Part shown: positions 11,701-62,676 of the stretch, one piece after another
Layout of the letters: each line of letters opens with the position of its first letter
How positions within the stretch are numbered: the first letter of the stretch is position 1
Assembly: GCA_964247055.1 (NCBI GenBank)
Contig: OZ176058.1
Span: 248,001-312,000, forward strand
Direction of reading: 5' to 3'
Length of the DNA: 64,000 nt
From: Paragordius varius
Taxonomy: Eukaryota; Animalia; Nematomorpha
Translations under genes and position numbers: made by a program
Notes under the pieces: model-generated
Databases searched by the model: none
Told to the model about the DNA's origin: nothing
What the model saw: the letters and a program-made list of their open reading frames with translations, nothing else

Positions 11701-12424
11701 CCGTATAATTTCAATTTAAAAAAATTTAAGATTATTTGACAAACTAAAAAAATGTAAAATAATCGGTTTTTTAAATAATTTGAAAAACCGGTTTTGTATG
11801 ATTCGACTGTTGCTTATTTTATTTTTTTGATAAAAAAAACTGTAAAATTTTTAAATATTACATACAGTTATAACGGTTAATTAAAAATGTTATTATTTTT
11901 TAAAACATACATTTAAAAATATATTTTTAATAAAAAAAATGTTTTTTTGATTTATATATTATTAATTTATTAAATTTTTAACTTATCAGCTGATTTTGAT
12001 GATAATTTTTAACGATTAATTACATACAGTTATAACTGGTCTTTTTTAAAAGGGTTTTTTTACTTTATATATAAAGTTTTCAGATTTACAACTAATAAAA
12101 ATATATTTTTATCCAATTTTAATTTTATTGAATTTTTAAAAATATTTTTTTTTCTTAAAATATACATATAAAGTTTTTAGATTACTTTTTAAATTTACAA
12201 GTAATAAAAATATTCCAAATTTAATTTTATTAAGTTTTTTAACTTATCAGCTGATTTTGATGAGCCCATTACAACGGCAAATCATCAACATGGCGATGAT
12301 TTGCAGACGACAAACTTTACCGAAAACGCGGACGACAAAATGGCCGCGCCCACATCATCATCAGCTGATGCGGTTGTAAAATATCCCCTCACTGTCTTAT
12401 ACTGTGACATTTGTTCAATGCCCG
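8787..12424. repeat. Right copy of the 8786-bp-offset duplication; continues into the intact DENR gene
   Basis: Same sequence as 1-3638, with no indel shift across 3.6 kb. Confidence 0.95.
10276..10477 (+). CDS. DENR: DENR putative exon 1 (charged low-complexity N-terminal extension)
   Basis: ORF MPSQQQKNKLRQ..HSHQAINK. Donor AAAG|GTTTTC is phase 1 and matches the phase-1 acceptor at 12251. Confidence 0.5.
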
Positions 12425-13097
12425 TAGAGTATTGTATGTATTCCCCAACCTTTACACAATGTAAAGCCTGGCTTCAAAAAACACATGTTCAAGTGTATGA
12501 ACGTATGTACATGCCCTCACAAAAACAGCTGACCACAGCTGATGTTACTAAAAATCAGCTGATCTCAACATCAGCTGATAAACAACCATCTGCTCAAGAC
12601 ATACTGAATGATATAAATTGCAATTTGGATTCCCTGAAATTGGTTAAAGGTTGTTTTTTGATTTTTTTTAAAGTTTTAATAATTTAATATTTTTTTTTGT
12701 TTTAATTTATTATTTCTTAATTATTTCCTTAGGTTTGATTTTTAGTTTTTTATAATCATAATTTTATATTTATCATTTGCTCTTCAAGAGTGTCCTTGAA
12801 CAGTTCAAGTTGGTCCTTAAAATTTAAAAATTTTAATTTAACCATAATTTTTGCATTTATTTTTTTATTTTATTATTTTTCAACCTAATTTTCTTTATTT
12901 ATTATATATTTATTCATTTAAAAATATAAATTTTTATTGAAAAACTACTTTTTTGTTTTAAACTATTTTTTATCGATTAAACAAAATTTTAACTTTTAAT
13001 TGTTTTTAATGAAAAATTTTAATTAATAAGTAAGAATACCTAATCTTATAAAAGGACCAACTTGAAGTGTTTAAGGACACTCTTTAAGTGCAAATGG

Positions 13098-13128
<31 letters not shown>

Positions 13129-15180
13129 ATCATTTTATTTAGTTCTATTTTTTTCTAATTTATAATATATCATTAATAAATGCATTTTTACACATTTTTT
13201 TCCCAGATACCGATTCCTTGGAAACAGCTGATACCGGCGAAGAAATGGCGGGCGCCAAAAAGCGACAAACCCGCGGCGGTCGAGGTATGAATACAGTCGC
13301 CAAAATGGCGACCGGCTCTAAATCATCGAAACAGCCGGCGAACGCGTCCGTTAAAGTTTTCACTGCACCTCGTGGAAAGAAAAAAGCTGTTACAGTTATA
13401 ACTGGTCTCGAGGATTTTGGGATTGATTTAAAGGTTAGACAAATTTGAAAAATTTTCTTTAAAAACAGCTGATTCGTTTGAAAAAAACGGTTGAAATCGC
13501 CATACTTACGCGAAAACATATGTTAAAAACAGATGTTTATAAGGTTATAAGCAGCTTTTGTTAAAGTTTTCACAGCACCTCGTGGAAAGAAAAAAGAAGG
13601 CTGTAACAGTTATAACTGGTCTAGAGGATTTTGGGATTGATATAAAGGTATAAATGACTGTATTTGAAAAATTTCGCGTTAAAAATAACTAAAACAGCTG
13701 ATTTGTTTGAAAAAAATGGAAACATACGAATATGTTAAAAACAGCTTTACAATGTTATAAGCAGTTTTATTTTAAGAATGGGTTTAACAGCTGCTTTTAT
13801 GACTTATAATGTCACATAATCAGGTGATTGTCATTTATTTTTTTTGACGATTTTATAATGATGGCGGATTAAGATGAAAACCACCCGTAAAATTGTCCGT
13901 TAAAGTTTTTATCGGTCCTTACGGAAATAAAATACAGTTATAACTGGTCTCTAAGATTTCGGATTTGATTTAAATCTACAAGCAAGATTTTTTGGAGTAA
14001 AATATAGATAAAAACAGCTGATTGTGCGAAAAAACGGTTTAAAACGGTTAGTATCTTTTGAGATTAAAATTTTGAGCGATAATTTGTAATTTTTTAGTTT
14101 TTAAAACAGCTGTTTTATAATAAGAAAATCGGGTAACAGTTGGTATGCTTATGACTGTTTTAAATTTTTTTTGACAAAAAATAAAATAATTTTAACTTTT
14201 AAATGGACGAAATAATGAAATTATATTTTGGAATTTTTCCAAAACTTTTTTGAATCTTCTAAAAGGTATTCATAATTTTTCATAATTTTCTAGAATTTTA
14301 AAATCCCGATTATATATCTGCGCGCACTAATATATAAAACGGTTTAATACATTTTTTTCAAAATAAATATTTGAAATATTCTATAATATATAAATTTTTA
14401 CAAATTTAAAAATTAGGATTTTTGATATATAAATATAATATATATATATATAAACCAATTACAATTTAAATTCACCCTAATATAAATAGAGTGTTTTTTA
14501 AGATTAAAAATTACCTATATTTTTTATATATTTTTAAAAAAATTGAATGCTATTTATAATTAAAATAATACTGAAAAAATAATAAACTATGCGCGCCATA
14601 AAGATATATTTTATATTGTTAATAATGAGTTGTTATATCAGTTTGAAAATACATAATATATTTTTAGGGTGAATTTGATTTGTTTAAGGGTGAATTTGAA
14701 TTGATAACGGTGAATTTAATTGTTCAAGGGTGAATTAGAATTTTTCAAGGAATTTTAACTGTTTAAGGGTGATTTTCAATCGTTCAAGCGTGAAATTGAA
14801 TTGCTTAAAGGTCAGTTTGAACTGTTAAAGGGTGAATTTGAATCGTTAAGCGCGAATTTGATTTGTTAAAGGGTGAATTTGAAATGTTTAAGGGTCAATG
14901 AACTGTAAATATATATAGCTATAATTAAAAAATTATAAATAATCATATATATTTTATTCTCCTTTTTTATTTTATAGCAATATCATATTTTTTTATTTAG
15001 ACAGCCAGTAAACTTTTTGCTACACGGTTCTCGTGTGGAGCATCTGTTACAGCTCCCAATGAAATTGTCATTCAGGGTGACGTTAAAGATGATGTCATTG
15101 ACCTGATTGGAGAAAGGTGGGGTGAAAACATACCCTCCCCTGCTGCTCAAATCAAAGATTTGGGCATTATGAAACGATAA
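10276..15180 (+). CDS. DENR: Density-regulated protein DENR/Tma22 (zinc-binding N-domain + SUI1 domain); 4 exons, 335 aa if exon 1 is used, 238 aa from ATG 12340
   Basis: KYPLTVLYCDICSMPVEYC..C..WL, KKRQTRGGRG, RGKKKAVTVITGL..FGIDLK, FSCGASVT..NEIVIQGDVKDD..DLG; all splice phases join in frame. Confidence 0.9.
12251..12649 (+). CDS. DENR: DENR exon 2 (contains canonical-looking start MAAPT at 12340 and the Cys-rich domain)
   Basis: Acceptor TTAACTTATCAG|CT, donor AAAG|GTTGTT; open frame throughout. Confidence 0.85.
12771..13099. mobile_element. MITE (family A-related TIR) in DENR intron 2
   Basis: ~50-bp inverted repeats: TATCATTTGCTCTTCAAGAGTGTCCTTGAACAGTTCAAGTTGGTCCTT versus AAGGACCAACTTGAAGTGTTTAAGGACACTCTTTAAGTGCAAATGGTA. 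Confidence 0.75.
13207..13433 (+). CDS. DENR: DENR exon 3
   Basis: TCCCAG|AT ... TTAAAG|GTTAGA; encodes KKRQTRGGRG..GKKKAVTVITGLEDFGIDLK. Confidence 0.92.
13558..14000 (+). repeat. Two intronic partial copies of the DENR exon 3 3' end
   Basis: 13560-13650 encodes VKVFTAPRGKKK..VTVITGLEDFGID and keeps a GT donor; 13895-13985 is a decayed copy. Confidence 0.85.
14455..14912. mobile_element. MITE family A, degenerate, with amplified 21-bp units in the right arm
   Basis: ACCAATTACAATTTAAATTCACCC left; multiple GGGTGAATTTGAA units ending AACTGTAAAT right. Confidence 0.65.
15001..15180 (+). CDS. DENR: DENR exon 4 (SUI1 C-terminus, stop TAA)
   Basis: TTTAG|ACA; TASKLFATRFSCGASVTAPNEIVIQGDVKDDVIDLIGERWGENIPSPAAQIKDLGIMKR*. 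Confidence 0.93.
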   Translation, partial: TASKLFATRFSCGASVTAPNEIVIQGDVKDDVIDLIGERWGENIPSPAAQIKDLGIMKR

Positions 15181-15290
15181 AAAATAAATTGTTTAAAATA
15201 TGTTACTTTTTTATGTTGGGTTTTTGTTACAGATCAGCTGATTTACTCGGAAAATTGAAAATATATACCAGATATTTAAGTTTATAGTAA

Positions 15291-15400
15291 TTGGAAAGAA
15301 GTGGGGTGAAAAATACCCTCCCCGGCGTTCAAATCAAAGATTTGGGCATTATGAAACGATAAATGAAAATAAATTTTGTTTAAAACATTTGTTATTGACT
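15291..15400 (+). repeat. Duplicate of the DENR last-exon end including stop codon and proximal 3' UTR
   Basis: GTGGGGTGAAAA..CCCTCCCC..CAAATCAAAGATTTGGGCATTATGAAACGATAAA repeats 15117-15185. Confidence 0.9.
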
Positions 15401-16025
15401 TTTTTATACTGGGTTTTTGGGTAAAACAGCTGATATTTTGTGACAAAAAATTGTAACTGCGTTTTTTACATGTCTGTAGATGTGAGGCAAAGATTTAAGA
15501 TTTTTAAATGATTTCAAATCACAATATATAAATAAAATAGTTAATTTATATATTAGCCTGATTAATATAGTAAAAGTTGAAATTTATGACATATAAAGAC
15601 AACCATATATTTTTTTCTAAAAGACAACTGCCCATATTTAAACCTTAATTTTTTTATATATATATATATAACTCATTGTTTTAAACTAAAAAGTAATATA
15701 TACAAATTTAATTGGTAACAAAATGAATTATTATGTATTTTACGATTGTAATTAAATGTTTTTTTATTGGATAAGGTTAAAAAAGTTTGGTTTCCATTTT
15801 AAAAAAATTTGTCTTTATATTATTTTTTTGTCCGTATAATTTTAATTTTAGCTGTAATATAATTTGATTGTTGTATAGCAATATTGTTTGATTGTTGAAA
15901 TTTATATAAACTGGATATAAACAATACAAAATTCACCACAATTTAAATTTTATCATAGGGCGATAAATATTTTCAAATTTTCTTTTTATAATAAAATTTT
16001 TTTAATTCATATAAACTTTAAAATA

Positions 16026-18711: not shown

Positions 18712-21700
18712 CTAAATTATAAAAAAAATAAAAAAAATTAATTTAAAAAAAAATAATAAAATTTTTAATAAATATTAAAATTAAAAAAATTAAAAAAATA
18801 TAAAATAAAAATAATTAAAAATTTATTAAAAATATAAAAATAAATGAAAAAAATTAAAAATAATAAAAAAAATTTCAAGAAATAAATTTTTAAAAACACA
18901 TTTTTTATTTTCTCACATATTTTCTAAAACATTTTAAAATTTTATAAAAAAACTGTTTTTTAACAGCTGACTTTTACTTTAATTAATATATATTATGAAA
19001 AAAATCCTTTTTATTTAAAAAAACTTTTTTTCTCTTTAAACTATTTTTTTAATTTCAAACTTTTAATTCTTAAATATCTATAAATATTTTAAATTTTAAA
19101 TATTTTATATTTTTGATCAGTTTTAATAATTTTACCATATTATTATATTATTTTAAACTTTTTTATAATTTTTACAATTTTAATTTTAAAAATTATAAAT
19201 ATTTTTTTTCAAAAATATAGTTTTTATATAAATTATATATATTTTTAATTATTTAAAAAAATTTTATATTTTTTTCATTTCAAATTTTTTTATCTTTGAC
19301 TTGTTACAATTTATATTCTTTTAAATTTTAATTTTTTTCATTTAAATATTTTTATTATTTATTTCAAACATTTTTTTATATTTTTTTATTTTAATTTAAA
19401 ATAATTTGATTTTTTAATCTTTATTAATTTTTATAAACATTTCCAAACTTAAACTTAGTTTTATTATCTTTTAACTTTTTTTAAACCTTTTTTACAAGTT
19501 TTTTAAAAACTTTTAAAAAAATAAACTTTTTAACTTTTTTTCAACTTTCAAAAATCCTTACTTATGCAATGTCCCACACAATCAGGTTTATTTTTGAAAA
19601 TACAATTTTTTAAATATTTTTAAAAACATTAATTTTTTATAATATTATTTCAATTTTAAATTTTTTTTTATTTTTTTTAACTTTTTTATAGAAATCATTT
19701 ATTTTTCAAACTTTTTAAATATTTTTTTTATCTTTTAACTTTTTTTGAAATTTTAAATATTTTTTAATCAAACTTTTTTTAACTAAAATTATTAATTTTT
19801 ACTTTTTCAAAAACCTATTTAAAAAAAATATTTAAAATTAATTTTTAAAACTTTTTTAATTTTTTTTAAAAACTTTTTATAAAAAAATTTAAAATTTTTT
19901 TTATAAAAAATAAATTAATAATTTGATTATTTTAAATTGATTAAAAAAATTTTTTTTCAAAAAAATAAATTTTTACTTATGCAATGGCCAACACAATCAG
20001 GTTTATTTTTTAAAATACAATTTTTATTTTTTAAAAAATAAATTTAATATTTTATAATATTATTTCAATTTTAAACTTTTTTTTATTTTTTTTAACTTTT
20101 TTATAAAAAATCAATTTTTATTAAAACTTGATTTATAGATTATGAATTTTTTTTTAAATTTTTTTAAACTTCAAAAATAAATTTTTTAAATAATTTAGTT
20201 ATTTAAATATTTTTTTTAAATAAACTTTTTATAAAAAAATTTAAATATTTTTTTTAAAAAAAAATAAAAATTCTTACTTATACAATGTCCCACACAATCA
20301 GGTTTATTTTTCCATAAAATACCCAATGCATAAACCGGGATTCCCAATAACATAATTCCCAACCCGATTCCACAATCGATGGGCGAAGAATAAAGAGGGA
20401 GTATTAATAAAAATACGCAAATAGCCAGAAAGAATATGGGTAGAGCTAGATTGTTCTAGAAAAGTTAAGAAAAAATAAAAAAATAGTTTAAAAAGTTTGA
20501 AATTTTTTAGGTTTTAAAAACTTTTTAAAGTTTAAAAAAATAAAAAAACAGATTTGTGGGTTAAAATATGATAATTGTAAAATTAATTTAAATCTTTTGT
20601 AAAAATAAAATTTATATAAAATTTTCATATAAATATATTTAAAATTTAAAAAAATTAATAAAAAAAATATCTAAATTTTTATTTTTTAAGAAACAATCGA
20701 TGGGCGAAGAATAAAGGGGGAGTATTAATGAAAACACTAAGTTATTCTAAATAGAAAAAAATAAAGTTTGAAAAAGTTTAAAATTTTTAAAAAATATAAT
20801 TATTTTTAAATTTAAAAAATAAAATTTTCAAAAAAATTAATAATAAAACAATATTTTATTTTTTATAAACAATCGATGGGCGAAGAGTATATAGAGGGAG
20901 TATTAATAAAAACACGCAAATGTCCAGAAATAAGATGGGTAATGTTAGATTGTTCTAGAAAAATATTTTTTTACGAAAAAAAATATTAAAAAATAAATAT
21001 GGTAATAATTTTAAAAAGTTATAATTTTTTTAAAAAACATTTTTTTTAATAATTTTTTATAATATATAAAAAAATTTAGATTTTTACGCGTAAAATTTAT
21101 TATAATTTTTTCTTAAAAACTTTTTTTTGTAATTTTTAAAAATGTAAAAAATATAGATGAGTTTAAAAAGTTTTTAAAAAAATAACCAATTTTTCGAATT
21201 TTATAAAAAATAGAGAAGAAAAATAAGATTTTTACGGTAAAATTCAATAATAATTTTTTGTCCAAAAAAATACTGTTAATTTAATTTTTTTCCAAATATA
21301 AAAAATAATAAAGATTTAAATTATTTTTAATTTTAAAAATATTTATATTTTTTTCAAAAAAATAAATTAATTATTTTTAATATTAAAAAAGTTTATTTTT
21401 TTCAGTCAATCTAAAAAATAATTTTTTTAGTCAAAAAACTAAAATTATTTTTATTTTTAATAAAAATATTTTTTTAGTCAAAACTCTAAAATATTATTGA
21501 AATAATTTATATATATTTTCAAAAATATTTCCAATTTTTTATATATAAAAAATATTTTTTAAAAAATATTAAAATATTTAAAAAAATCCTAAAAATATAA
21601 ATTTTTGTATTAATTTAATTTTAAATTATTTCTAAAAAAAAATAATAACTTTTATAGGAAAATCTTAAATATTATTAAAAATATCAAAATAATCATAAAA

Positions 21701-24700
21701 AAATATGCTAAAAACATTTTATAAAAATTAAAATATCAAAAAAATCCTAAAAATATAAATAATTTAATTTTATATATTCTAAAAATATATAATTTTTATT
21801 TAAAAAAAAAATTAAAATAATTACTTTTATAGGGCGATACATATTTTTCCGCGTAAATCTGAGGTATAAAAGCGCCGCCACTGAAAGAGTTATAAAGGAT
21901 GATTCCACAAAACTCGTATAATTAATCAGGGCAAGAATGTTTGTAGAAACGCACATAAGAGCGGATAGAGCACCCTATTTTATAGATAGTTACATAAATA
22001 TCATAGATAGTTACATTAATTTTTTACATAATTACATAGATAGGCACATTAATATCATAGATAGTTACATAAGAGCAGCTGTTAATAGATATTTTCATAA
22101 ATATCATAGATATGCACATTAACTTTATTGATAGATACATAAAACTCCAAAAAACCCAATGATTTTTATGAAAAACAGCTGTTCATAGATAGTTACATTA
22201 AATTTATAGATAGTTACATTAATTCTTAAAACAAAACTCTCGTATAATTAATCAGGGCAAGAATGTTTGTAGAAACGCACATAAGAGCGGATAGAGCACC
22301 CTATTTTATAGATAGTTACATAAATATCATAGATAGTTACATTAATTTTTTACATAATTACATAGATAGGCACATTAATATCATAGATAGTTACATAAGA
22401 GCAGCTGTTAATAGATATTTTCATAAATATCATAGATATGCACATTAACTTTATTGATAGATACATAAAACTCCAAAAAACCCAATGATTTTTATGAAAA
22501 ACAGCTGTTCATAGATAGTTACATTAAATTTATAGATAGTTACATTAATTCTTAAAACAAAACTCTCGTATAATTAATCAGGGCAAGAATGTTTGTAGAA
22601 ACGCACATAAGAGCAGATAAAGCACCCTAATATATCATAGATAGTTACATAAATATCATAGATATGCACATAAAATTTAAAAATAGTTACATCAAAAACA
22701 GCTGTTTTTCATAGATAATTACATAGATAGTTCCTAAAAGTAGTATTTTATAGATGTATAATATAATTCATAGATGCGCACATTAATTTTATAGATAGTT
22801 ACATAAATTATAGATAGTTACATTAATTTATAGATAGTTACATAGATCTCATAGATAATTACATAGATATCTCCTAAAAGTAGTATTTTATAGATGTAAA
22901 CATAATTTATAGATGCGCACATTAATTTTATAGTTACATAAAATCAGCTGTTTTTCATAGTTTAAAATAAAATCAAAAATTTTAGATACTCACATAAATC
23001 TTCATAGATATTCACATAAAAACAGCTGTTTCTTATAGATAATCACACAAATGTTTATAGATACTTACAGTAAATATTAATGAGGGGATAGGACTGTACT
23101 TTGTTGTACTAATCATGGCCAGGAATCCTGGCAAATGGCCTTCACGAGCCCCCACAAAAAATAATCTAAAAAAATAAATTAAAAAAAATTTTAAAATTTT
23201 TAAATTTTAAATTTTTTTTTAATTATTTAAAATATTTAATAAAATTAAATAATAAATAATAAGAGAATATAAAAAAATCACAAAATAAAAAAAATAATAA
23301 TCTAAATTTTTTTTTCAATTTTAAAAATAAAAATTATATATAAAATAAAATATTTTTTTTTATTATTTAAATATATTAAATTATTATTATAAAAAATATT
23401 TTTTACAATTTAAACAATGGTAAATGGCCTTCACGGGCCCCCACAAAAAATAATCTAAAAAAAATAAAATTAAAAAAAAAAATTATTTTAAAAAAAAATT
23501 TTAAAAAATTTTTTTAATTTATTTAAAATATTTAATAAAATTAAACAATTATAAATTTTAAAATTTTTTAATTTAAAAATTTTTTAAACAATATCATAGT
23601 TTTTAAAATATTTTAGAGTATTTTAAAAATTTTCTATTAACAATTTTATTTAGGAATTTTTAACTTCAATTTTTTTATATATTTGAATTAAAAGTAAAAA
23701 AATTTAAAAAAATTAAAAAATCAAAATCTTTAATAAAAACTTTAAGATTTATGATCTAGAAAAAATATAAATTATGTATATATTTTTTATAAAAAAAGCT
23801 AAATTATTTTTAAAAAAATTGAATTTTTTTTAAAAAAAATTAAAATATTTTATCAAATCTTCATCCTTTTAAATTAATTTTAAAATTTTAAATAAACTTA
23901 TTATTTTTTAAATAATTTATTTAAAAAATTTTACAATATTTAATTTTTTTAATATTTTTAAAATATTAAAAAAAATTAAAAAATCAAATTTTTTGAAAAC
24001 CTCGAAGAAGCAAAAATTCCGCCATTCCCACCATTTTTTTTATATTTTTTACATTTTTATTGTTAACTATTTAAATTTATATTTTATTAAAAAATGTTAT
24101 TATTTTTTAAAAAATATAATATATCTATAAAAAAAAGAATAAAATATTTTTTTATTATTTAAATATATTAAAATTTTTTTCAAAAAAACTGAAATAAAAC
24201 CTTGAAGAAGGAAAAATACCGCCATTCAGCTCGCCAAAAGTTGATGCTGCCACGAAAATATTTTTATTTTTTTTTATTTTCTATAATATATATTTTTTAC
24301 AATTTCATTTTTTTTGAAATTTAATTTAATTATAATTTTAATTTAATTTTATTTCTTTGATAATTTTTTAATAAAAATAAATATAATTTTTTCAAAAAAT
24401 TTTAATATTTATAACAAAATATAATTTTAAATTAATTTTATTTCTTTTACAATATCTATTAAATTTAATTTATTTTTTTAATTAAAAAATTTTAAAAATT
24501 TTTTTTAAAAAAATTAAAAAAAAACCTTGAAGAAGCAAAAATACCGCCATTCAGCCCGCCATTTTTTTAATATTTTTTAATTTTTATAAATTTTACATGT
24601 TCTTTTAAATTTTATATTTTTTTAAATAAATTTTTTAATTTAATAATTTTTTTATTTTTATAAAATATATTTTTTAAAAGAATTTAATTTTTTTAAAAAT

Positions 24701-25816
24701 ATTTTTTTTAATTTTCTACCTTGAAGAAGCAAAAATGCCTCCATTCAGCCCGCCATTTTTTTCAATATTTTTTTGATAATTATATATTATTTGTATTTTT
24801 AACTAATAATTTCTTATATAAATATATATATCTATAATTTTAATGTTGTTTATTTAATTAAATATTTTTAATTTAATTAAATATTTTTAACTATTTAAGT
24901 TAATTTTTTTATAAAAATTAAAAATTAATTTTTTCAAAAAATTAATTTTTTAATAAAAACCTCGAAGAAGCAAAAATGCCTCCATTCAGCCCGCCATTTT
25001 TTTCAATATTTTTTTGATAATTATATATTATTTGTATTTTTAACTAATAATTTCTTATATAAATATATATATCTATAATTTTAATGTTGTTTATTTAATT
25101 AAATATTTTTAATTTAATTAAATATTTTTAACTATTTAAGTTAATTTTTTTATAAAAATTAAAAATTAATTTTTTCAAAAAATTAATTTTTTAATAAAAA
25201 CCTCGAAGAAGCAAAAATTCCACCATTCAGCCCGCCAAAAGTCGATGCTGCCACGAAAATTGGCATAATCCAAGAAAAACGCCCCAGCGTTTTTTCAGCA
25301 AAAGTCTAAAAATTTAAAATAAAATTAAAAAAAATAATTTTTAAAATAATAAATTTTTTAAAAATAAAATATATATATATATGTTTAAATTTATATTTAT
25401 TAATATTATAATAATAAAAAAAAATTTTTTTAAAATTATATTTTATATTTTTTTAAATATAAAATTAAATTTTAAAATAAAATTTTTTTTAAAAAATAAA
25501 AAAATAAAATTTATAAAATATTAAAATTAAATTTTGTTAAATATTAAAAATAAATTTTTTAATAAATATTAAATAATAAAAAAAATTTTTTTTTAAAAAA
25601 AATAAAATATTTAAAAAAAAAAATAATTTTAAATTATGGAATAAAATTTTAATTATTGAAAATATTTTAAAAATAAAATATATATATAACATATATATAT
25701 GATATATATTTATTAAACGTTTATTAAATATTAATTAATAAAAAATTATAGAATAAAATTTTAAATTTTATAAAATAAATTATTTTTAAAATAAAAAAAT
25801 AATTTATAATAAAATT

Positions 25817-25861
<45 letters not shown>

Positions 25862-25942
25862 TTTTATAAATAAAATATATATATATGTATTTTATACATG
25901 AAAAAAGATTAATAATTTTTTAATTTTTGTAAATTTAAAAAA

Positions 25943-25982
<40 letters not shown>

Positions 25983-28900
25983 TTTTATAAATAAAAAATA
26001 TATATATATTTTATACATGAAAAAAAATTAATAATTATTAGAATTTTATTAATTTTATAAAATATCAAAAATATTAAAATTTAAATATATATATATTATT
26101 TTTTATAAATAAAAAATATATATATATTTTATACATGAAAAAAAATTAATAATTATTAGAATTTTATTAATTTTATAAAATATCAAAAATATTAAAATTT
26201 AATTTTAATAAAATTTATAATTATATATATATATATATATAAATATACTTTTTTTGTTAAATTTCTAAAATGAAAGTTTTTTATTAATATAATTTTCAAA
26301 TAAAATAAAATTAAAAAAAAATTTTGAGTACAAATATAATTATTTTATGAGAAAAAAAGATTTTCCAAAAATTAAAAAAAAATAGCCAAAAAATATAAAA
26401 TAAATAATTAAAATATTATAAAGAATTAAATATTTATTTATAAATATTACGACAACCACGGCTTTATAATATTGAATATGCATGAATACTTTTTTAATTT
26501 TAAATTAATAACTTTAAAATAAATTAAAAAATAAAAAATCTTAATTTTATTTGAAAATGCAAAAAAAATTAAATTAAATAAAATTAAATAATTAAAATAT
26601 TATAAAAAAAATTAAATTTTTTTTTATAAAATAATTAAAAAATTATTAAAAAAAATATAAAAATTATTTTTTAATTATAATTCTCTTACGACGTCCACGG
26701 CTTTAGAATTTTTATTAAAATTACAATATATAATACAACCTTTTTTTAAAAAAATTAGATTTTTTTTATTAAATTTAATTAATATTTTTTATTCAAATTA
26801 ATAAGATTCTTTGACAACAGCCACGGCTTTAGAATATTCATTTAAAAAAATTACAAAAATTAAAAATTTTGAAACTATAATATACTTTTAAAAAAAAATT
26901 CAAAAAAATAATTGAAAAAATAAAAAAATTATAAAAAAAATATTTTTTTAATATTTTTATTTAAAATTCTCTTACGACAGCCATAGCTTTGAAATATTCA
27001 TTTTTAATTTAAATAATTAAAAAAAAATTATTTTATTTAAATAAATTAAATGAATTATAAAAAAATTTTTCATAAAAATTAAATAAAAACTAAAAAACAA
27101 AAAAATTAAAATATTTATTATAAAAATAAAAAATTAAAAAACAACTTTATAAAAATTAATTAAAAAAAATTAAAACAAATTTATAAAAATTAAAAAAACT
27201 AAAAAATTAAAATATTTTTTAAAAAATCCCTAAATTTAATAATTTATAATAAAAAAAATTAATTTTTTTATAAAATTAAATTTTTTTATTTCAGGATTCT
27301 CTTACAACAACCACAGCTTTAAAATATTCATTTTAAAAAAATTATTTTAAAATATAAAAAAAATTAAAATTTTAAACTGTAATATAAACTTTATTAAAAT
27401 TTAAAAAAAAATTATTATTAATATTAATATTTAAATTTAAAATATTCAAAATTCTGAAAAAATATAATTATTATATTATTTTATTAAAAAATTAATTATT
27501 TAAATTAAAAAACATTTTCCAAAAAAAATTAAATAATTAAAAATTAAATTTACAAAAAATAAAAAAATTAATATTTTCAAAATTATTAAAAAAATTATAT
27601 TTTCCAAAATTAAAAAAATAGTTATCTTAAAATTATTTTAAAAAAACCCTTAAATAAAAAATTAAAAAACTTATAAAAAATATTTTTTCCATTGTAGTTC
27701 TCAGAAAAATTAAAAATAAAATCAAAAAGACCTTTTCAAAATTTTAAAAAATTTATATTTTCATTTATAAAATCTTACGGAATATTGAATATTTTATTTT
27801 GAAAAAATTTAAAAAATATATATTTTTTATTTAATTAAAATAAAAAATTATAAAATAAAAAAATTAAAAAAATATTTTTTATTTATAATTCTTACGACAG
27901 CCACGGCTTTAGAATATTGATTTTCAATTTTAATATTTAAATTAAAATTATAAAAAAATTTAATTAAAAAAATTTATAAATTTCTAAATAAAATAATCTT
28001 TTTATTTAATTAAAATTTTAAAAAAACTAAATAATTTAAAATTAAAAATATATTAAAAATTATAAAATCAAAAAGATAATTTCAATAATTTTAAAAAACA
28101 TTTCAATTCAAAAAAAATTTAGGTATAAATTTTTTTTTATTTTTTTATAAATATATAAATATTATTATTTTTATTTAATAATCTTAAGACAGCCACAGCT
28201 TTAGAATATTAAATATTTTTATAATATTTATTAAAATCACTAAGATAAATACAAATAAAAAATTATAAAATTAAATATTAATAAGAAATTCTTTAATTTA
28301 AAAATTAAAAAAATATTGATTTTTCATAAAAAATTATTTAAAATTTTTAAAATATAAAATAAATTATTAATATATATATTTTTTTAATTTTAAATTCTTT
28401 TATTTAATTTAATAATTTAAAATAAAAAATTTATAATAAATTAAATTATTTCTTTAAAAAATATAAAAATTTAAATTATTAATTTAAAAAAATTCTTACA
28501 ACAGCCACAGCTTTAGAATACTGAATTTCTATTGGAGTCATAACTGCAAAATACGCCACGTTTGCTAAAACATAAACGATGGTAACTAACGGTAAGCTTA
28601 TATAAATGGCACGGGGTAGATTTCTAAAAAAATATTAAAATTTTTTAAAATATAATTAAATTAATTATTTTTTAAAAATTGAAAATAATATAACAAATTT
28701 TGTATTAAAATTGTTTAAAAACCTTAAAATATATTATTTTATTAAAATCAGCTGTTTTTTTAAAAAAATTGAAAAACAGCTGTTTTTTTAAAAAATAAAA
28801 TTTTTAAATTATATTTGAAAAAATAAAGAATTCTTATTTGTATATAAATATTTTATATAATCATGAAAAATATTCAATTAATGAACAGCTGTTTCAAAAA

Positions 28901-30926
28901 TATGAAACAAACAGCTGTTTTTTCAAAAAAATAAGATTTTATATTTAAAAAATATGCAACGTCTGCTAAAACATAAACGATGGTAACCAGAGGTAAACTT
29001 ATATAAATAGCACGGGGTAGATTTCTATAAAATAATTTATAAATATTAATAAAACAGCTGATTATAAAAAAATTTTAAATAATATATATATATATTATAT
29101 TTATATAAATTATATATAATTAAATAGATTGCTCTGAAAAATAATAAACTAATGAAAACAGCTGTTTTGAATAAAGAAAATTATAAAACAGCTGATAAAA
29201 AAATATAAAAATATTATTGAACTAAAATATTAAAAATAGAAATCATATTTATACATTAATATGCTAAAAAATTATAAATTATGAAAACAGCTGATTTTTA
29301 TTCAAATTTTTAATTATAATATTAGGAAATATTTAAGTAATTTCATGTTGTTTTAAAAAATATTTTTATTGAAAATAAAAAATATGCCACGTTTGCTAAA
29401 ACATAAACGATGGTAACTAACGGTAAGCTTATATAAATGGCACGGGGTAGATTTCTATAAAAAATATTTTTAGGAAATTTAATTATTTAAATTATTATAT
29501 GATTATAAAAAAATTAAATTGGTGAGAACAGCTGTGTCTAATTAAAAAAATATAAAAACAGCTGTTTTTTCAAAAAAATAATAAAATTAAAAAAATATGC
29601 CACGTTTGCTAAAACATAAACGATGGTAACTAATGGTAAGCTTATATAAATGGCACGGGGTAGATTTCTATGAAATTAAAAATTATTTAAAATTAAATAA
29701 TTTTTTTTATAAAATAATTAAAAATTAATTATTTTAATAAATATATAATTAAAAAATTTCGCTCTGAAAAAAAGTTTATTAATAGCTATTTTTTAAAAAT
29801 ACAATAACAGCTGATTACAAATAAAAAATTATTAAATTAATCAGCTGTTTTTAATAAAAATTTAATGAAAACAGCTGTTTCTAATAGAGTAAAATTAAAA
29901 ATTAATATATTAGGCAAATTTTGCATAATTATTTCATTTTAAATAAAAATTTCAAAATTAATAAATATGCCACGTTTGCTAAAACATAAACGATGGTAAC
30001 CAGCGGTAAGCTTATATAAATGGCACGGGGTAGATTTCTATAAAATAATTTATAAATATTAATAAAACAGCTGTTAATCATCATTTTTAAATAATTTTAA
30101 TTTTTTATTTATAAATATATATATATATAAATTTTTTGAAATATATTATTTATTCATTAAAAACAGCTGGTTTCTAAAATTAAATCGCATATAAATTTTT
30201 TTAATAAATATTTTTGATTGTAAGTAACGGTAAGTTTAGATAAATGGTACGGGGTAGATTTTTATAAAATAATTTAAATTAAAAAAAGTTTAATTATATT
30301 AATTTTTAAATATTGAAATATATAATAAAATTGTTTTAAAAATCTTGAAATATATTAATTTATTAAAATCAAAAATAAATTGATAAAAAACTGATAAACA
30401 GCTGATTAGAAATTAATTTATTATTAAATTATATTTAAAATGTTATATTTAAATTTTATATTATTATGAAAAAAAATTAATGAAAACATATGTTTCTAAT
30501 TTAAAAAAATGAAAACAGCTGTTTTTTCAAAAAATGAGATTTTAAAGTTAAAAAAATACGCCACGTTTGATAAACGCAAACGATGGTAGGTAAACTTATA
30601 TAAATGGCACGGGGTAAATTTCTATAATATAAAAAATTATTTTTTAAATAAAATTATTAATTTAATTAAAAAAAAATATTTTTTGAAATACAAATATTTA
30701 AATTTTTTAAAAAATTATAAATTTATATAGAAAAAAATAAAAAATTTTATATTTAATGCTCGAGGGCTGTTGATATATTTAAAAAATAATTTTAAAAAAA
30801 AATTAAAATAAAACTTATTTTATTTAAATAGATAAATAAATAAATTATTTTATTTATAAAAAATATAAATCTTAATATAAATTTTTTGATTTTTTTTAAA
30901 AATATCTCATAAAACTGTAAAATTTG

Positions 30927-30962
<36 letters not shown>

Positions 30963-38773: not shown

Positions 38774-38816
<43 letters not shown>

Positions 38817-39094: not shown

Positions 39095-39156
<62 letters not shown>

Positions 39157-39278
39157 GAAATATATTAAATAAAAAAATAAAAAAATTTTTAAGATAAAAA
39201 ATTAAACATTGTAACAATTTATCGTTAGAAATACTAAAATAATATGTTTTAAATTAAAAAAAAACAATTAAAAAAATG

Positions 39279-39318
<40 letters not shown>

Positions 39319-39645
39319 GTAAAAAAAAATTTTTAATTATATAAATATTTATTTTATACTTTTAAAAAAATGTTTCTTTATTTAATATATTTTTAAATTT
39401 ATTTATATGTATATATAAAGATTTCAATTAACATTGTAGCAATTTATGAAGGTTAGAAATGCTAAAAAAAAAATTAAATTTAAAAAAAATAAATATTTTT
39501 AAAAAAAATGTTTTTTATATTGAATATATATATATATATATATATTAAAATTAAATTATCTTAATTATAAAATAATATATTTATTTAAAATAAATATAAT
39601 TTTAAAAATAATATTTATTTTTTAATAATTAAAAAAATATTTCTT

Positions 39646-39686
<41 letters not shown>

Positions 39687-57586: not shown

Positions 57587-60500
57587 ATGGGTGTTTTGAG
57601 CAAATTTGGTTTGCAGCAAAAATTTGCAGGTTTTTTTTGTCTTTGCATAGGAAATTAAATTTTTATAATAATGTATTTATTTTAAAAGTTATTTTATGAT
57701 TTTAATATAATAAACTAAATATATTTATTACCTAAATTTAAATCCTGGAAATAGATTGATTATTGCATTTTTTATAACATTTTTAATATTAAGAATCAAT
57801 TTTTAATATGAAGTTGTAATTTCTATTAATTTGAAAAACAATTTCCTGAAAATATTTTGTAAATTTTGATTTTCTAAAAGCCCAACTTATTTCTTATAAT
57901 TATTTTTACAATATTTTCCTGTAAACTTAAATTTTTTCGGGAAAAAAAAATTTGTTAATAATTTATATATTTATATTTTTTTTAAAAATACATATAATAT
58001 ATGTATATATTTTAAATTCATTTTTCTTATTTATGTTTTATTTTAATTTTTTAAATTTTTATTTTAGCTATTTTTATTTTTTTTAATATTTTAATTTTTT
58101 AAATTTAATTTATATTTTTTTAAATATTTTAATTTTTTAAATTTCTTCATTTCTTAAAAAATATTTATATTATTTATATTTTTGAAAATATTAATATTTT
58201 ATTAAATGGAATTTATCAACTTTTTTATAAAATTAATTTATTTGTTTTAATTTCCTATATATTTTTATATAAAATTAATTTTTTTATTTTTTTAAATTTT
58301 TTTTAAATTGAATTTATCATTTTTTTATTCTTTTTATAAAATAAATTTATATATTTTTTTAAATTATTTTTTTTTAATTTTAGGGTTCAGACCTCTAAGT
58401 TCTGGAAGTCACAGAATTATGGAAATTTTTCCTTCAAATTGGACCACAAGGAAAACTTTTGATATTATTGTAATTAATTTTTATTTAATAAATATTTTTT
58501 TTAAATAAATAATTTTTTTTATTATAAAAAGTTTTTTTTTATAAATATTAAAATTATTTTATAAATTTTTTTTATTAATTTTTTTTTTAAAAAAAATTTA
58601 TGAATATTATTTAAATATTAATTTGTTTTTAAATTAATTTTTTTTATTATTAATTTTTTAAATAAATATTTTTCTGATTTATATTTAAAATATTATAAAA
58701 TAAATATTTTATTATTATTTATAATTTTTTAATTTATTTTTTTATTTAATATCTTTATTTTATTATTTTTGATGAATATTTTAATTTTAATTATTTTTTT
58801 AAAATTAATTTTTCTTTTTTTATTTTTTTTTTAATATTTTTTTTATTTTTTTGTTTATCTTGATTTTTTTAAATATATTTTGTATTTTTATTAATTTTTT
58901 AATTAATTTCAAAATAAATTTTTTTTAATTTATTTTTTTTTATTTAAATTAATTTTTTGAATTTTTATTTTTTTGTTTTTTAATATTTTTTCAATATTTA
59001 TTTAATTTTTTTTAATTTTATATTTTATTTTTTTTATTTTTTTAAATTTATTTTTAAATATTTTTTAGCATTTCTACGTATGTTTAACCGGCTTGCCGCT
59101 TTTAGCTTGGGTCCTATATTGTCAAATTGTCATTGGTTTTTAATTTTTTTTATTTTTATTTAAATAAATTTATTTTTTATTTAATAATTTTTAATAAAAT
59201 AAATTTTTTTATTTTTAAGAAATTTATTTTAAGATATTTCAAAATATATATTTAATAGGAAAATTTACATAATATCCCAAATTTTAATTTTTTTTATTAA
59301 AGTTAAATTTTATGAAAAAAATTAATATTTTTTTTATTTAAATAATTATTTTTTAATTTTTTATAGTTTTTTAAAATTTATTTAAAAAAAATTAATTTAG
59401 AGATATATTATAATTTATATATTTATTAAAAATTTTATAAATTACCACATTCAAAAAAAAAATCATAATAAAATGGAAAAAAATATTTTCTAATCTATTA
59501 AAATAAAAAATATTTTTATGAATTTTTGGTTTAATAAATTTAAAATATTCAATTTTTATATATTTAATATTTAATTTAAAATTTATTTTAAAAATTATTT
59601 TTTTATTTTTTTTTATTTTTTAAGGACCAGCTGTTTTAACAGAAATTCCTGAAGGATATATACCAGAAGAATATGAATATTATAAAGTTTTTATTTAATT
59701 TATTTTTTATTTTTAAATTTCTAATTTAATATTTTTTTATTTTTTTCAAAAAATATATAAATTATGAATTTATATTAATTTAATTTGTTAGAAAAATTAT
59801 AAAAAGCAAATTAATAATTTAAAAAAAAATTTTATTTTAATAAATATTTTTATTTAAAAAAATATATTTTATTTTTTTTATTAAATTAAATATTTTTATT
59901 TATTCAATTTTTTTTTATCTTTTTATTTATTCAAAAAATATAATTATAAATAAAATAAAATGTTTTATTGTCTTATGAATTTTTTTACAAAAAAATAAAA
60001 AATTTATTTAATTTTTTTTTAAAAAAATGTATAAATTATTAATTTATATGAATATGATTCAGTTTATTAAAAATTAATTTTTTAAAAATAAAATTATATA
60101 AAATGGATATTTATGAAAAAAAATTAAATTCCTAATTATAATTAAATAATTATATTTTAAAATTTTTTATCAAAATATTTATATTTTATTTATTTATTTA
60201 AATTATTATATTTTAAAATTTAAATCAAAATTAATATATTTATTTATTTAAAAATTATATTTTAAATTTTTTTATCAAAATTAATATTTTTAATTATTGA
60301 TTTAAATAAATATAATAATATTTTAAATTTTTTTATCAAAATATTTTTATTTATTTATTTATTTTAAAAAATATTATAAATAATAAATGTTTTATTGTCT
60401 TAAAAATTTTATTGAAAAAAAATTATTTTTTTATATTTTATCCAAAAATTTATAATTTGAAAAAAAATGCGCAGTGTCCCATTGGTCGAAATTTAATTTT

Positions 60501-62676
60501 TAATTTTATAAATAATTTTTTCTAAAAAATATTTTAATATATAAAAAAAATATAAACAATATATAAATTTCTATAATTATTTAATAAAATTATTCAAAAC
60601 TTTGAAAAAAATTCACAAAAATTGATTTTTAATTTTTATATATTTTTTTCAAATTTATATTTTAATAAAAATATAAATAAAATATAAATTTATAATTTTT
60701 TTAAGTAAAATAAATATTTTTATTTAAAAATCTAAAAATTTGAAAAAAATGCGCAGTCTCCTATTGGTCGAAAATTGATTATTAATTTATATAATCAATT
60801 TTTTTATTATTTTTTTTCTAAAATATTGAAATAATCTTTTAAAAAAAATATATAAATTTTAAAATTTTTTAAAAATATAATTTTTTTTTATTCAAAAATT
60901 TAAAAAAATTCGCAAAAATTGATTTTTAATTTTTATCTATTTTTTTTAAATTTAAATATTATAATAAAAATATAAATAAAATATAAATTTATAATTTTTT
61001 ATCAATTTATTTAAATTTTTTATTCAAAAATTCAAAAATTTGAAAAAAATGCGCAGTCTCCCATTGGTCGAAAATTGATTTTTTTTACAAATAATTTTTT
61101 TTATTATTTCTGAAAATATTGAATAAATCATATAATAATTATTATTTTAAGAGATAAAAAATATAAATTTTTATAATTTTTTATATTTTTGTGCAAATAT
61201 TTATTGATTTTTTATTTTTCAAACATTTTTTTAAATAAAAATAATTCTTTTAATAATTAATATTTTAAAAGATAAAAAAATTATAATTTTTTATTTTATA
61301 TCATTAATTATTATTAATTTATATAATTTTTTTATTTAAATTATAAGTAATATTTTATTTTTTATTCAAAAATTTAAAAATTTGAAAAAAATGCGCAGTC
61401 TCCCATTGGTCGAAAATTGATCTAATATTTTTAATAAACAATTTTTATTTTTATAATTTTGAAAATATTGAATAATTTATATTTTTAAAAATTAATTTTT
61501 TCAAAATGTAAAAAATATAAGTTTTTATAATTTTTTTAATATAGGTCATTTTTAATTTTTTTATTTTATTTTTTTATATTTTTTTGAAAATATAAAATTA
61601 ATCTTTTAATAATAATTATTTTATTTTAAAACATAAAAAAATATAAATTTTTATATTTTATTTAATTAATTAATTTATTTATAATATTTTTATCCAAAAT
61701 TTTAAAATTTTGAAAAAAATGCGCAATAAACAATATTTATATTATTTTTTTTGAAAATATTTAATTAATTTTTTGACAAATAAATATTTTTTAAATATAT
61801 GTTTTTTTTATTTTTTTTTTTATTTTTTATTCAAAAATTTAAAAATTTGAAAAAAATGCGCAGTCTCCTATTGGTCGAAAATTGATTTTTAATTTTTATA
61901 ATAAATTTTTTTTTGAAAATATTTTAATATATAAATATTTTTAATGGAAATATATAATTTATAAGTTTTATATATAAGTTTTTTTAATTATTTTATTTAT
62001 TTTTTTTTATTTTTTTATTCAAAAATTTGAAAAAAATTCGCAAAAATTGATTAATTTTTATATATTTTTTATAAATTTATATAATAAAAATATAAATAAA
62101 ATATAAATTTATAATTTTTTAATATAAGTTAAATAAATTTTTTTATTCAAAATTTTGAAAAAAATGCGCAGTCGCCTATTGGTCGAAAATTGATTTTTAA
62201 TTTTTATAAATAATTCATTTTTTGAAAATTTTTTTAATATATAAATAAAATATTAACAATATATAAAATTTATAATTATTTAATAAAAGTTTTTTAATTA
62301 TTTTATTTTATTTATTTATTTATTTTTATTCAAAAATTCAAAAATAAAATGCGCAAAAATTGATATTTAATTTTTATATATTTTTTTTTGAAAATATTGA
62401 ATAAAGATTATATATTAATTATTAATATTTTTTAAAATGTTGAAAATTATAATTTTATAATTATTATATATTTTTAAATATTTATTATTTTTTTAAAATT
62501 ATAAGTTATTTTTATAAATTTTTTTTATTATTTTATTTAAAAATTCAAAAATTTGAAAAAAATGCGCAGTCTCCCATTGGTCGAAAATTGATAAAGATGA
62601 GTGGTCAGAATTTTGCACGTGACTATGAAAGAGAATTTGAATTTATAGAAAATAAATTTGAAACTATGAAATGGAG
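57587..62676 (+). CDS. NDUFB5: NADH dehydrogenase [ubiquinone] 1 beta subcomplex subunit 5 (SGDH); 3'-partial. Exons 57587-57629, 58384-58469, 59069-59135, 59625-59686, 62570-62676
   Basis: Spliced: MGVLSKFGLQQKFAGFRPLSSGSHRIMEIFPSNWTTRKTFDIIHFYVCLTGLPLLAWVLYCQIVIGPAVLTEIPEGYIPEEYEYYKSPIGRKLIKMSGQNFARDYEREF... It matches the family pattern FY..LTG.P...IG.A.L.EIPEGY.P...EYYK.PI.R. Exon 1 is less certain. Confidence 0.85.
60460..62370 (+). repeat. NDUFB5 intron 4 array: six full (60468, 60748, 61048, 61390, 61856, 62163) and several partial copies of the exon 5 acceptor + first codons
   Basis: TTTGAAAAAAATGCGCAG|T(C/G)(T/G)CC(C/T)ATTGGTCGAAA recurs in ~300-470-bp AT-rich units. Confidence 0.93.

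What the first reader, a model, noticed from the sequence alone, without database searches (positions are those of the whole stretch)
11986..62676. Exon-edge 'spare part' arrays in all three genes, diverged almost only at synonymous sites
Seen: about 55-60 same-strand intronic fragments copy one edge of the neighbouring exon together with its splice site. They occur in 11 of 12 SLC7 introns and in DENR and NDUFB5. Acceptor+5' pieces always lie upstream of the exon and 3'+donor pieces downstream. In well-preserved copies the differences from the real exon are overwhelmingly synonymous (hand counts syn/nonsyn: exon 3 acceptor copy 11/0; exon 3 donor copy 10/1; exon 5 copies 3/0, 3/0, 4/0; exon 6 donor copy 3/0; exon 10 copy 2/0; exon 11 copy 2/0; exon 12 donor copy 3/0), while the AT spacers diverge freely. 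Established: a neutrally decaying pseudo-exon should accumulate changes at all codon positions, most of them non-synonymous. Inference: these untranslatable fragments are filtered by protein-level selection. One route is cycling in and out of the functional exon by unequal crossover or gene conversion, where array contraction makes the copy the real exon edge. Another is somatic repeat-mediated deletion that builds a chimeric exon. I know of no description of this as a gene-architecture system, but could not search the literature.
Basis: partly seen in the sequence, partly recalled or inferred. Interest (0 to 1): 0.92.

Follow-up and report, generated by a model that had tools for sequence, protein, structure and literature searches.

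The report
Dead exon-edge copies echoing divergent alleles
The introns of three ordinary genes hold about 50 truncated tandem copies of their own exon ends that differ from the working exons mainly at silent codon positions, most likely because they were sampled from very divergent working alleles of the same exons, not because they form a maintained reserve.

Summary
A blind search finds 52 exon-edge copies on the gene strand and none on the opposite strand. All acceptor pieces lie upstream of their exon and all donor pieces downstream. Differences fall 46/34/163 on codon positions 1/2/3, with 158 silent against 71 +/- 6 expected.

The "spare-part system" reading is only partly right. Three results point elsewhere:
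- Third-position differences show no base-composition direction (63 versus 60) and do not track decay (rho 0.11).
- Position-1/2 differences run towards A/T (47 versus 13), and 8 copies carry indels, so the copies decay neutrally.
- A spliced mRNA contig and equal-depth DNA contigs reveal other working versions of SLC7 exon 3. They differ from the reference at about 20% of third positions, and every listed difference is silent. At least three such versions occur in two samples.

Ten of 15 silent variants of the expressed allele recur in the reference intronic copies (4.7 expected, P = 0.001). The mRNA skips every copy.

Best reading: tandem duplication and unequal exchange between very divergent functional haplotypes park former exon edges in introns, where they decay. 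Whether the second version is an allele or a paralogue is not settled.

Earlier follow-ups of this scan reached the same reading at three other loci of this genome.

The parts
20278..47026 (-). SLC7 (L-type amino-acid transporter) gene. Exons: E1 46770-47026, E2 45353-45513, E3 42860-43195, E4 41237-41377, E5 38217-38342, E6 32485-32590, E7 31501-31545, E8 28500-28623, E9 25202-25305, E10 23069-23165, E11 21825-21974, E12 20278-20455. The last exon was not located.
   Evidence: tblastn with full-length homologues. In-frame join with AG/GT sites. A spliced RNA contig confirms the E2-E3, E3-E4 and E4-E5 junctions.
43312..43964 (-). E3 acceptor-side copies at 43312-43409 and 43516-43590, plus older weak copies at 43779-43837 and 43886-43964.
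   Evidence: Third-position differences are 11/25 and 9/17, against 2/51 and 3/36 at positions 1/2.
41780..42516 (-). E3 donor-side copies at 42437-42516 and 42195-42283, and a decayed copy near 41780-41850.
   Evidence: A 1228-nt contig covering 41651-42878 has 0 differences.
40711..41698 (-). E4 acceptor-side copy at 41586-41686 and E4 donor-side copies at 40981-41024 and 40711-40777.
36682..39477 (-). E5 acceptor-side copies at 38560-38605, 38857-38908, 39201-39241 and 39425-39477. E5 donor-side copies at 37533-37613, 37141-37213 and 36682-36758.
   Evidence: There are 0 position-1/2 changes and 2-4 third-position changes per copy. The variants CTA, TTC and TGT also occur in the expressed allele (loose end at 41237).
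31960..35968 (-). E6 acceptor-side copies at 32956-33026, 33759-33818, 34374-34399, 34679-34741 and 35903-35968. E6 donor-side copy at 31960-32016.
26795..30627 (-). E8 acceptor-side copies at 28949-29037, 29379-29468, 29592-29678, 29952-30050, 30216-30280 and 30553-30627. E8 donor-side copies at 28177-28214, 27887-27929, 27300-27334, 26960-27028 and 26795-26843.
   Evidence: The series runs from a near-intact copy (29379-29468, 1 silent difference) to decayed ones (26960-27028, 11 of 35 position-1/2 sites changed, 1 stop).
23418..24996 (-). E9 donor-side copies at 24941-24996, 24705-24755, 24514-24561, 24196-24259 and 23989-24027. E10 acceptor-side copy at 23418-23476.
   Evidence: Two adjacent Gly codons each show three silent states among the copies.
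19550..22649 (-). E11 acceptor-side copies at 22232-22320 and 22558-22649. E12 acceptor-side copies at 20869-20962 and 20693-20737. E12 donor-side copies at 19959-20010 and 19550-19595.
12340..15419 (+). DENR exons at 12340-12649, 13207-13433 and 15001-15180. Exon 2 donor-side copies at 13560-13649 and 13878-13974. A copy of the exon 3 end with stop codon and 3' flank at 15290-15419.
   Evidence: The older exon 2 copy has 10 of 65 position-1/2 changes, a 7-nt deletion and a stop.
57587..62676 (+). NDUFB5 exons at 57587-57629, 58384-58469, 59069-59135, 59625-59686 and 62570-62676. Exon 5 acceptor-side copies at 60454-60497, 60737-60779, 61037-61079, 61379-61421, 61844-61886 and 62154-62194.
1..3638 (+). 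Upstream member of a 100% identical direct duplication (equal to 8787-12424) that ends inside DENR exon 1 at coding position 85. It is a large, very young example of the same layout, with the 5' piece upstream.

Best explanation
The fragments are dead by-products of local tandem duplication and unequal (misaligned) exchange with one breakpoint inside an exon. Such a duplication is tolerated only if the truncated piece ends up on the intron side. This is why acceptor pieces lie upstream and donor pieces downstream.

The silent-only differences arise because this animal carries several very divergent functional versions of each exon, most likely alleles. These versions differ almost only at synonymous sites because selection has filtered them as working exons. 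Misaligned recombination or gene conversion between such haplotypes parks a former working exon edge of one haplotype next to the working exon of another. At birth, the copy therefore differs from its neighbour only silently. After that it is untranslated and decays neutrally towards A/T, picks up indels, and is eventually lost or duplicated again within the array.

Shown here:
- the arrays and their polarity;
- the synonymy filter;
- the two-component pattern of differences;
- the divergent functional versions;
- the sharing of variants between copies and the expressed allele;
- normal splicing that skips the copies;
- array differences between haplotypes.

Inferred: that the second version is allelic, that capture by unequal exchange is the route, and what molecular trigger causes the duplications.
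For: 1. Polarity and strand. There are 52 hits on the gene strand against 0 on the opposite strand. All acceptor pieces lie upstream and all donor pieces downstream. About 28 distinct exon-internal breakpoints are shared within families.

2. Two components of difference.
- Third-position differences (163) have no direction: 63 go from G/C in the exon to A/T in the copy, and 60 go the other way.
- Position-1/2 differences (80) run towards A/T, 47 versus 13 (Fisher P=0.0004).
- Third-position divergence does not track position-1/2 decay (Spearman 0.11).
- Twenty-four copies have 0 of 618 position-1/2 changes but 49 of 305 third-position changes.
- The other 27 copies show 7.5% position-1/2 change, and 8 of them carry indels.

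3. Divergent functional versions.
- A 2750-nt spliced RNA contig (X12) differs from reference E3 by 22 substitutions, and all 17 listed are synonymous third-position changes.
- DNA of sample S1 has two E3 contigs over 42987-43176 at equal depth: 195 with 0 differences and 211 with 12 differences. All 18 listed alternative letters are synonymous.
- The S1 and S2 alternatives differ from each other at about 7 silent sites, so there are at least 3 functional versions.
- Their third-position divergence (22/112 = 0.20) equals the pooled copy-to-exon value (163/836 = 0.195).

4. Variant sharing. Ten of 15 silent variants of the expressed allele that fall in copy-covered exon parts are carried by at least one intronic copy of the reference haplotype. 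The null expectation is 4.7 +/- 1.6 (P=0.0014).

5. Splicing. The mRNA removes intron 3 (1482 nt, GT..AG), with its three E3 donor copies and the E4 acceptor copy, in one piece.

6. Array structure differs between haplotypes and samples. Examples are contigs with joints that skip 195 nt (exactly one unit) or go back 181 nt, and six extra E3-like contigs in X2 only.
Against: - Both DNA samples share an identical reference haplotype over about 2.5 kb of intron, and both show the second version at about 1:1 depth. This would also fit a fixed paralogue or a permanent hybrid, and it is odd for a freely mixing hyperdiverse population unless the animals are related.
- The alternative sequences are known only from k-mer contigs and a truncated difference table. 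No phased haplotype was seen, so no alternative exon edge could be read together with its own array.
- The E3 copies differ from the exon at 44-53% of third positions, about twice the divergence measured between functional versions, although the counts are small.
- The event that starts a duplication is unknown. Breakpoints are not A/T-rich (0.575 versus 0.589, P=0.72), and only about 1 of 28 lies on the CAGCTG motif.
Confidence: 0.68

Rival explanations
1. The arrays are a maintained reserve. Copies cycle so often in and out of the working position, by unequal crossover or gene conversion within a lineage, that protein-level selection keeps the fragments themselves clean.
For: Copy-type bases occur in working alleles and in mRNA. 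One X2 contig joins a C1-type 5' edge in register to the exon body, skipping exactly one 195-nt unit. Splice dinucleotides are kept in 44 of 47 copies.
Against: - Exchange frequent enough to purge non-synonymous changes (much faster than mutation) would also erase synonymous differences, yet pS is 0.26 and reaches 0.5.
- Copies show A/T-directed decay at positions 1/2, frameshifting indels and stops.
- Third-position divergence is independent of decay.
- No function is apparent, because the variants are silent.
Confidence: 0.12
2. The second functional version is a paralogue or homeologue at another locus, from a duplicated or hybrid genome. The copies acquire silent differences by ectopic conversion or exchange with it. 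The mechanism is otherwise the same.
For: The two versions are at equal depth in both samples (about 200/200 in X1 and about 57/57 in X2), and segments identical in both are at double depth (99.8 in X2). The reference version is identical in both samples.
Against: - The alternative version differs between S1, S2 and the RNA at several silent sites, in a mosaic pattern.
- Its array structure differs between samples.
- Its intron pieces still align to this locus's array units (X1 record 7).
- At least three versions are seen among two samples.
Confidence: 0.15
3. This is a fossil-snapshot model with no allelic input. Each copy is a frozen image of the exon at the time of duplication. The exon then drifts at silent sites while the copy decays.
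For: Twenty-one differences are private to the exon, with all copies agreeing against it, and 18 of those are at position 3. The expressed allele agrees with the copies at some of these sites.
Against: - The model predicts a third-position to position-1/2 divergence ratio of about 1.7 and a positive correlation between the two.
- The observed ratio is 4.1 (z about 4.4 on unique events) and rho is 0.11.
- The E5 families have 9 silent and 1 non-silent unique events.
- Copies keep about 40% G+C in a background of about 10%.
Confidence: 0.08
4. Somatic or programmed repeat-mediated deletion between a copy and its exon builds chimeric exons in some tissues.
For: Only the presence of in-register direct repeats, and of contigs with unit-sized skips.
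Against: The skips occur at haploid depth and differ between individuals, as haplotypes do. Depth across the arrays is flat (197.5 in X1 and 56.1 in X2 over 41715-42435). The mRNA is explained by ordinary splicing.
Confidence: 0.02

Closest known systems
Tandem duplication across an exon-intron boundary (Rogers-type duplication, discussed for intron gain; e.g. PMC2891723 on Drosophila)
   Same: The duplication has one breakpoint in the exon and copies a splice site. The gene survives because only one of the duplicated sites is used.
   Different: In that case a single event creates or shifts an intron. Here the truncated piece stays as dead intron content, is amplified into arrays of up to 6 units, and occurs in nearly every intron.
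Gene conversion or unequal crossover between a working gene and linked pseudogene fragments (own knowledge: CYP21A2/CYP21A1P; chicken immunoglobulin pseudo-V donors)
   Same: Untranslatable partial copies lie in cis and share sequence tracts with the working copy.
   Different: No diversification or disease effect is evident, because the shared variants are silent. The copies are exon edges with splice sites, not genes or V segments. The direction of transfer is not established.
Concerted evolution of tandem arrays by unequal exchange (own knowledge: minisatellites, rDNA)
   Same: The units lie head to tail, copy number and structure differ between haplotypes, and variants are shared in mosaic patterns.
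   Different: One end unit of each array is part of a coding exon, so selection on the protein marks which sequences have been in the working position.
Hyperdiverse animals (own knowledge: Caenorhabditis brenneri, Ciona savignyi)
   Same: Functional alleles differ at a large share of silent sites, and their introns are hard to align.
   Different: Silent divergence here (about 0.2-0.26 in one exon) would exceed those cases. It rests on one locus and two samples. Allelism is not proven.
Mutually exclusive exon clusters (own knowledge: Dscam-type)
   Same: Tandem exon-like copies lie inside a gene on the same strand.
   Different: The copies are truncated, have only one splice site, partly carry frameshifts and stops, and are absent from the mRNA.

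Membership tests
Tandem partial-exon duplication arrays shaped by unequal exchange | Copies lie on the same strand as the source, inside the adjoining intron | tested here: met
   52 hits on the gene strand and 0 on the opposite strand at E<=1e-5. 51 lie within 5 kb.
Tandem partial-exon duplication arrays shaped by unequal exchange | Polarity: the truncated piece lies on the intron side of the edge it copies | tested here: met
   All 27 acceptor pieces lie upstream and all donor pieces downstream.
Tandem partial-exon duplication arrays shaped by unequal exchange | Breakpoint shared within a family (amplification of one unit) and near-identical neighbouring units | tested here: met
   For example, four E8 copies end at exon position 76 and six N5 copies at position 23. 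A 241-nt E9 unit and a 326-nt E11 unit are repeated almost exactly.
Tandem partial-exon duplication arrays shaped by unequal exchange | Array structure varies between haplotypes | tested here: met
   Alternative-haplotype contigs show unit-sized skips and go-backs. X2 has six extra E3-like contigs that are absent from X1.
   8 of 51 copies carry indels and some carry stops. 80 position-1/2 changes are biased towards A/T, 47 versus 13.
   10 of 15 silent variants of the expressed allele are shared with copies, P=0.0014.
Alternative or mutually exclusive exons | Both splice sites present, frame kept, and inclusion in mRNA | tested here: not met
   Each copy has one splice site only. The spliced contig joins E2-E3-E4-E5 directly and skips the copies.
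Assembly artefact (falsely duplicated haplotypes) | Arrays absent from read-level data | tested here: not met
   Contigs with 0 differences span the arrays in runs of two samples.
Programmed or somatic DNA elimination | Depth drop over the eliminated DNA and precise deletion joints within one individual | tested here: inconclusive
   Depth is flat over the arrays. The joints seen are at haploid depth and differ between samples, as haplotypes would. No germline versus soma pair was available.
Hyperdiverse allelic variation | The divergent versions segregate at one locus | not testable with these tools
   Only k-mer contigs of two samples were available. The mosaic differences between S1, S2 and the RNA favour alleles, but no phasing or cross exists.

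The most novel reading that the evidence does not exclude
The exon-edge arrays and the extreme silent divergence of working alleles are two sides of one process. Unequal exchange moves exon edges between the working and the parked position, and between haplotypes. Parked edges occasionally return as multi-nucleotide, selection-screened silent replacements of the working edge. This would be a genome-wide, previously undescribed mode of exon evolution in an animal whose functional haplotypes differ at about a fifth of third codon positions.
Probability: 0.2. Interest if true: 0.7.

Novelty: new variant of a known kind. Interest (0 to 1): 0.5.

Why it matters
The pattern looks like selection acting on DNA that is never translated, and that would be remarkable. 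The data instead point to known processes: tandem duplication, unequal exchange and purifying selection on working alleles. These processes operate here at an unusual scale, in a genome with exceptionally divergent functional haplotypes.

Two points remain worth following:
- Nearly every intron of ordinary genes carries arrays of its own exon edges. I found no description of this in the papers I could search.
- The working versions of one exon differ at about 20% of third positions. If these versions are alleles, this animal is among the most polymorphic known.

The parked copies would then be a readable record of past alleles and of unequal-exchange events.

Tried and rejected
1. Hyperdiverse alleles seemed unlikely at first, because contigs of two samples were identical over the arrays. 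The second lay of reads, at 85% likeness on a repeat-free stretch, revealed the divergent second version.
2. Runs X5 and X6, filed under other organism labels, were tried as outgroups. They hold exact 151-nt matches at depth 2-4, which looks like carry-over of the same DNA, so they give no polarity.
3. A/T-rich microhomology at exon-internal breakpoints was tested and not supported (0.575 versus 0.589, P=0.72).
4. CAGCTG as a unit boundary was tested. The motif is hugely enriched (77 occurrences) but is absent from the E5, E6, E9 and N5 arrays and sits on only about 1 of 28 breakpoints.
5. A mutation-bias explanation fails. G+C at position 3 is only 0.31, and the same base changes placed at random give 71 silent against 158 observed.
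6. I tried to fetch the alternative haplotype through the protein collections. The best hit to exon 3 is 77% identical, so this species is not in them.
7. A search with 60-nt flanks was swamped by A/T-rich chance matches (254 same-strand versus 201 opposite-strand hits) and was abandoned in favour of 20-nt flanks.
8. The literature searches found no description of such arrays. A horsehair-worm genome paper (10.1101/2023.06.26.546503) reports 26.9% G+C and 0.55% k-mer heterozygosity for another species and does not mention them.
9. The recursive-splicing and alternative-exon readings were rejected on anatomy and on the mRNA.
Full report
WHAT IS THERE

The window is very A/T-rich. Introns have 8-15% G+C and exons about 40-45%. 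I built gene models for three genes.
- An L-type amino-acid transporter (SLC7) lies on the minus strand. Twelve exons were located, and they join in frame with canonical AG/GT sites.
- DENR has three exons on the plus strand.
- NDUFB5 has five exons on the plus strand.

A spliced RNA contig later confirmed the E2-E3, E3-E4 and E4-E5 junctions. It also moved the exon 4 acceptor from 41302 to 41377. Earlier notes of this scan call the genome a probable horsehair worm. I did not test that.

THE OBSERVATION

Each exon, with 20 nt of flank, was searched against the whole window.
- At E<=1e-5 there are 52 non-self matches on the gene strand and none on the opposite strand.
- Fifty-one lie within 5 kb of their exon, in the adjoining intron.
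- All acceptor-plus-5' pieces lie upstream of their exon, and all 3'-plus-donor pieces lie downstream.
- Eleven of twelve SLC7 introns hold copies, as do DENR and NDUFB5.
- The splice dinucleotide is kept in 26 of 27 acceptor copies and in 18 of 20 true donor copies.
- About 28 distinct exon-internal breakpoints exist, and several are shared by whole families. This shows that single units were amplified.
- Contigs from runs of two samples cover the arrays with no differences, so the arrays are not assembly artefacts.

THE SILENT BIAS

The bias was counted over all 50-51 copies, not only the well-preserved ones.
- pS is 0.261 and pN is 0.047.
- Differences fall 46/34/163 on codon positions 1/2/3.
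- 158 of 243 differences are synonymous. Shuffles that keep every copy's own base changes give 71.3 +/- 6.4.
- Within third positions, 153 of 163 differences are synonymous against 142.3 +/- 3.4 expected (P=0.002). The filter therefore acts on synonymy, which means on the protein.

WHY THE COPIES THEMSELVES ARE NOT UNDER SELECTION

The differences fall into two components.
- Position-1/2 differences run towards A/T (47 versus 13), as expected for neutral decay in this genome.
- Third-position differences have no direction (63 versus 60; Fisher P=0.0004).
- Third-position divergence is unrelated to position-1/2 decay (rho 0.11).
- Twenty-four copies have 0 of 618 changes at positions 1/2 but 49 of 305 at position 3.
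- The other 27 copies have 7.5% change at positions 1/2. Eight of them carry indels, mostly frame-breaking, and several carry stops.

So a copy is born with its silent differences and then decays like any intron DNA.

A pure fossil model fails. In that model the copy is frozen and the exon drifts silently. It predicts a third-position to position-1/2 ratio near 1.7 and a positive correlation between the two. The observed ratio is 4.1 (z about 4.4 on unique events), and there is no correlation.

Frequent exchange within one lineage also fails. It would erase the silent differences too, yet pS is 0.26 and reaches 0.5.

THE MISSING PIECE: DIVERGENT WORKING VERSIONS

Contigs of an RNA-like run (X12) and of DNA runs from two samples were laid on 41200-44280.
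- One 2750-nt spliced contig joins E3 to E4 across a 1482-nt GT..AG intron. Its loose ends match E2 and E5.
- Over E3, this contig differs from the reference by 22 substitutions. All 17 that are listed are synonymous third-position changes.
- In E4 the five listed differences are three silent changes and one replaced codon, which lies in a lineage-specific loop.
- DNA of sample S1 holds two contigs over 42987-43176 at equal depth: 195 with 0 differences and 211 with 12 differences.
- Sample S2 shows the same pattern at about 57 each, and a segment identical in both versions lies at 99.8.
- All 18 listed alternative letters in S1 are synonymous, including a first-position TTG to CTG change.
- The alternatives of S1, S2 and the RNA differ from each other at about seven silent sites. 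At least three working versions therefore exist.
- Their third-position divergence (22/112 = 0.20) equals the pooled copy-to-exon value (0.195).
- Alternative-haplotype intron contigs align only in pieces, with unit-sized skips and go-backs. S2 has six extra E3-like contigs that S1 lacks, so the arrays differ between haplotypes.

THE LINK BETWEEN COPIES AND ALLELES

Fifteen silent variants of the expressed allele fall in exon parts that have intronic copies. Ten of these are carried, with the same base, by at least one copy in the reference haplotype. The null expectation is 4.7 +/- 1.6 (P=0.0014). The E5 edge of the mRNA, for example, carries CTA, TTC and TGT, exactly as the E5 acceptor copies do.

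However, the mRNA also carries many variants that no copy has, and its exon order is normal. It is therefore another allele, not a product of splicing to the copies.

MECHANISM

The best reading has three steps.
1. Tandem duplication or unequal exchange occurs with one breakpoint in an exon. This is tolerated only in the observed polarity.
2. It takes place between very divergent functional haplotypes, and so parks former working exon edges in the intron.
3. The parked edges then decay.

Confidence is 0.68. Three things are not settled: whether the second version is allelic or a paralogue, how often parked edges return to the working position, and what triggers the duplications. Breakpoints are not A/T-rich, and the abundant CAGCTG palindrome is not required.

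COMPARISON AND VERDICT

The processes involved are known: boundary-spanning tandem duplication, unequal crossover, conversion between genes and pseudogene fragments, and purifying selection on alleles. What is unusual is the scale, with arrays in nearly every intron, and the depth of functional divergence. I found no published description of this.

Three earlier follow-ups of this scan reached the same reading at other loci of this genome.

The class is a new variant of a known kind, with interest 0.5.

Noticed in passing
window 1-3638 and 8787-12424: A direct duplication of at least 3.6 kb, 100% identical, with a period of 8786 nt. Its upstream copy ends inside DENR exon 1 at coding position 85. 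It is either a very recent tandem duplication or an assembly artefact.
   Followed up: partly
whole window, e.g. 12362, 12526-12572, 41285, 45392-45458, 47008: CAGCTG occurs 77 times in 64 kb, where about one is expected. It sits within a longer palindrome, A[AT]CAGCTG[AT]T. Fourteen occurrences lie inside coding exons, where the motif is read as Ser-Ala-Asp in poorly conserved protein parts. The motif is clumped and is absent from several exon-edge arrays.
   Followed up: partly
window 46961-47011 (SLC7 exon 1): A second allele at half depth in run X1 carries several changes within 51 nt. They include GCT to AAT (Ala to Asn), which removes a coding CAGCTG, so the motif is polymorphic in coding DNA.
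   Followed up: partly
window 44284-46670 and 14660-14900: Very high-copy repeats, with word depth of 1e5 to 3.6e6 against about 200 for single-copy DNA. They include tandem units of GGGTGAATTTGAATTG type and short elements that are shared between introns.
   Followed up: no
window 41303-41377: The RNA shows that SLC7 exon 4 starts 75 nt further upstream than homology alone suggested. This adds a 25-residue lineage-specific loop, which itself contains a CAGCTG and has its own upstream copy at 41586-41686.
   Followed up: yes
window 12029-12046: A 17-nt exact piece of DENR exon 2 lies upstream of exon 1. This is an exception to the rule that donor-side pieces lie downstream.
   Followed up: no
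runs X5 and X6 laid on 41100-47050: Runs filed under two other organism names hold exact 151-nt matches to this locus at depth 2-4. This looks like carry-over of this animal's DNA rather than DNA of relatives.
   Followed up: partly
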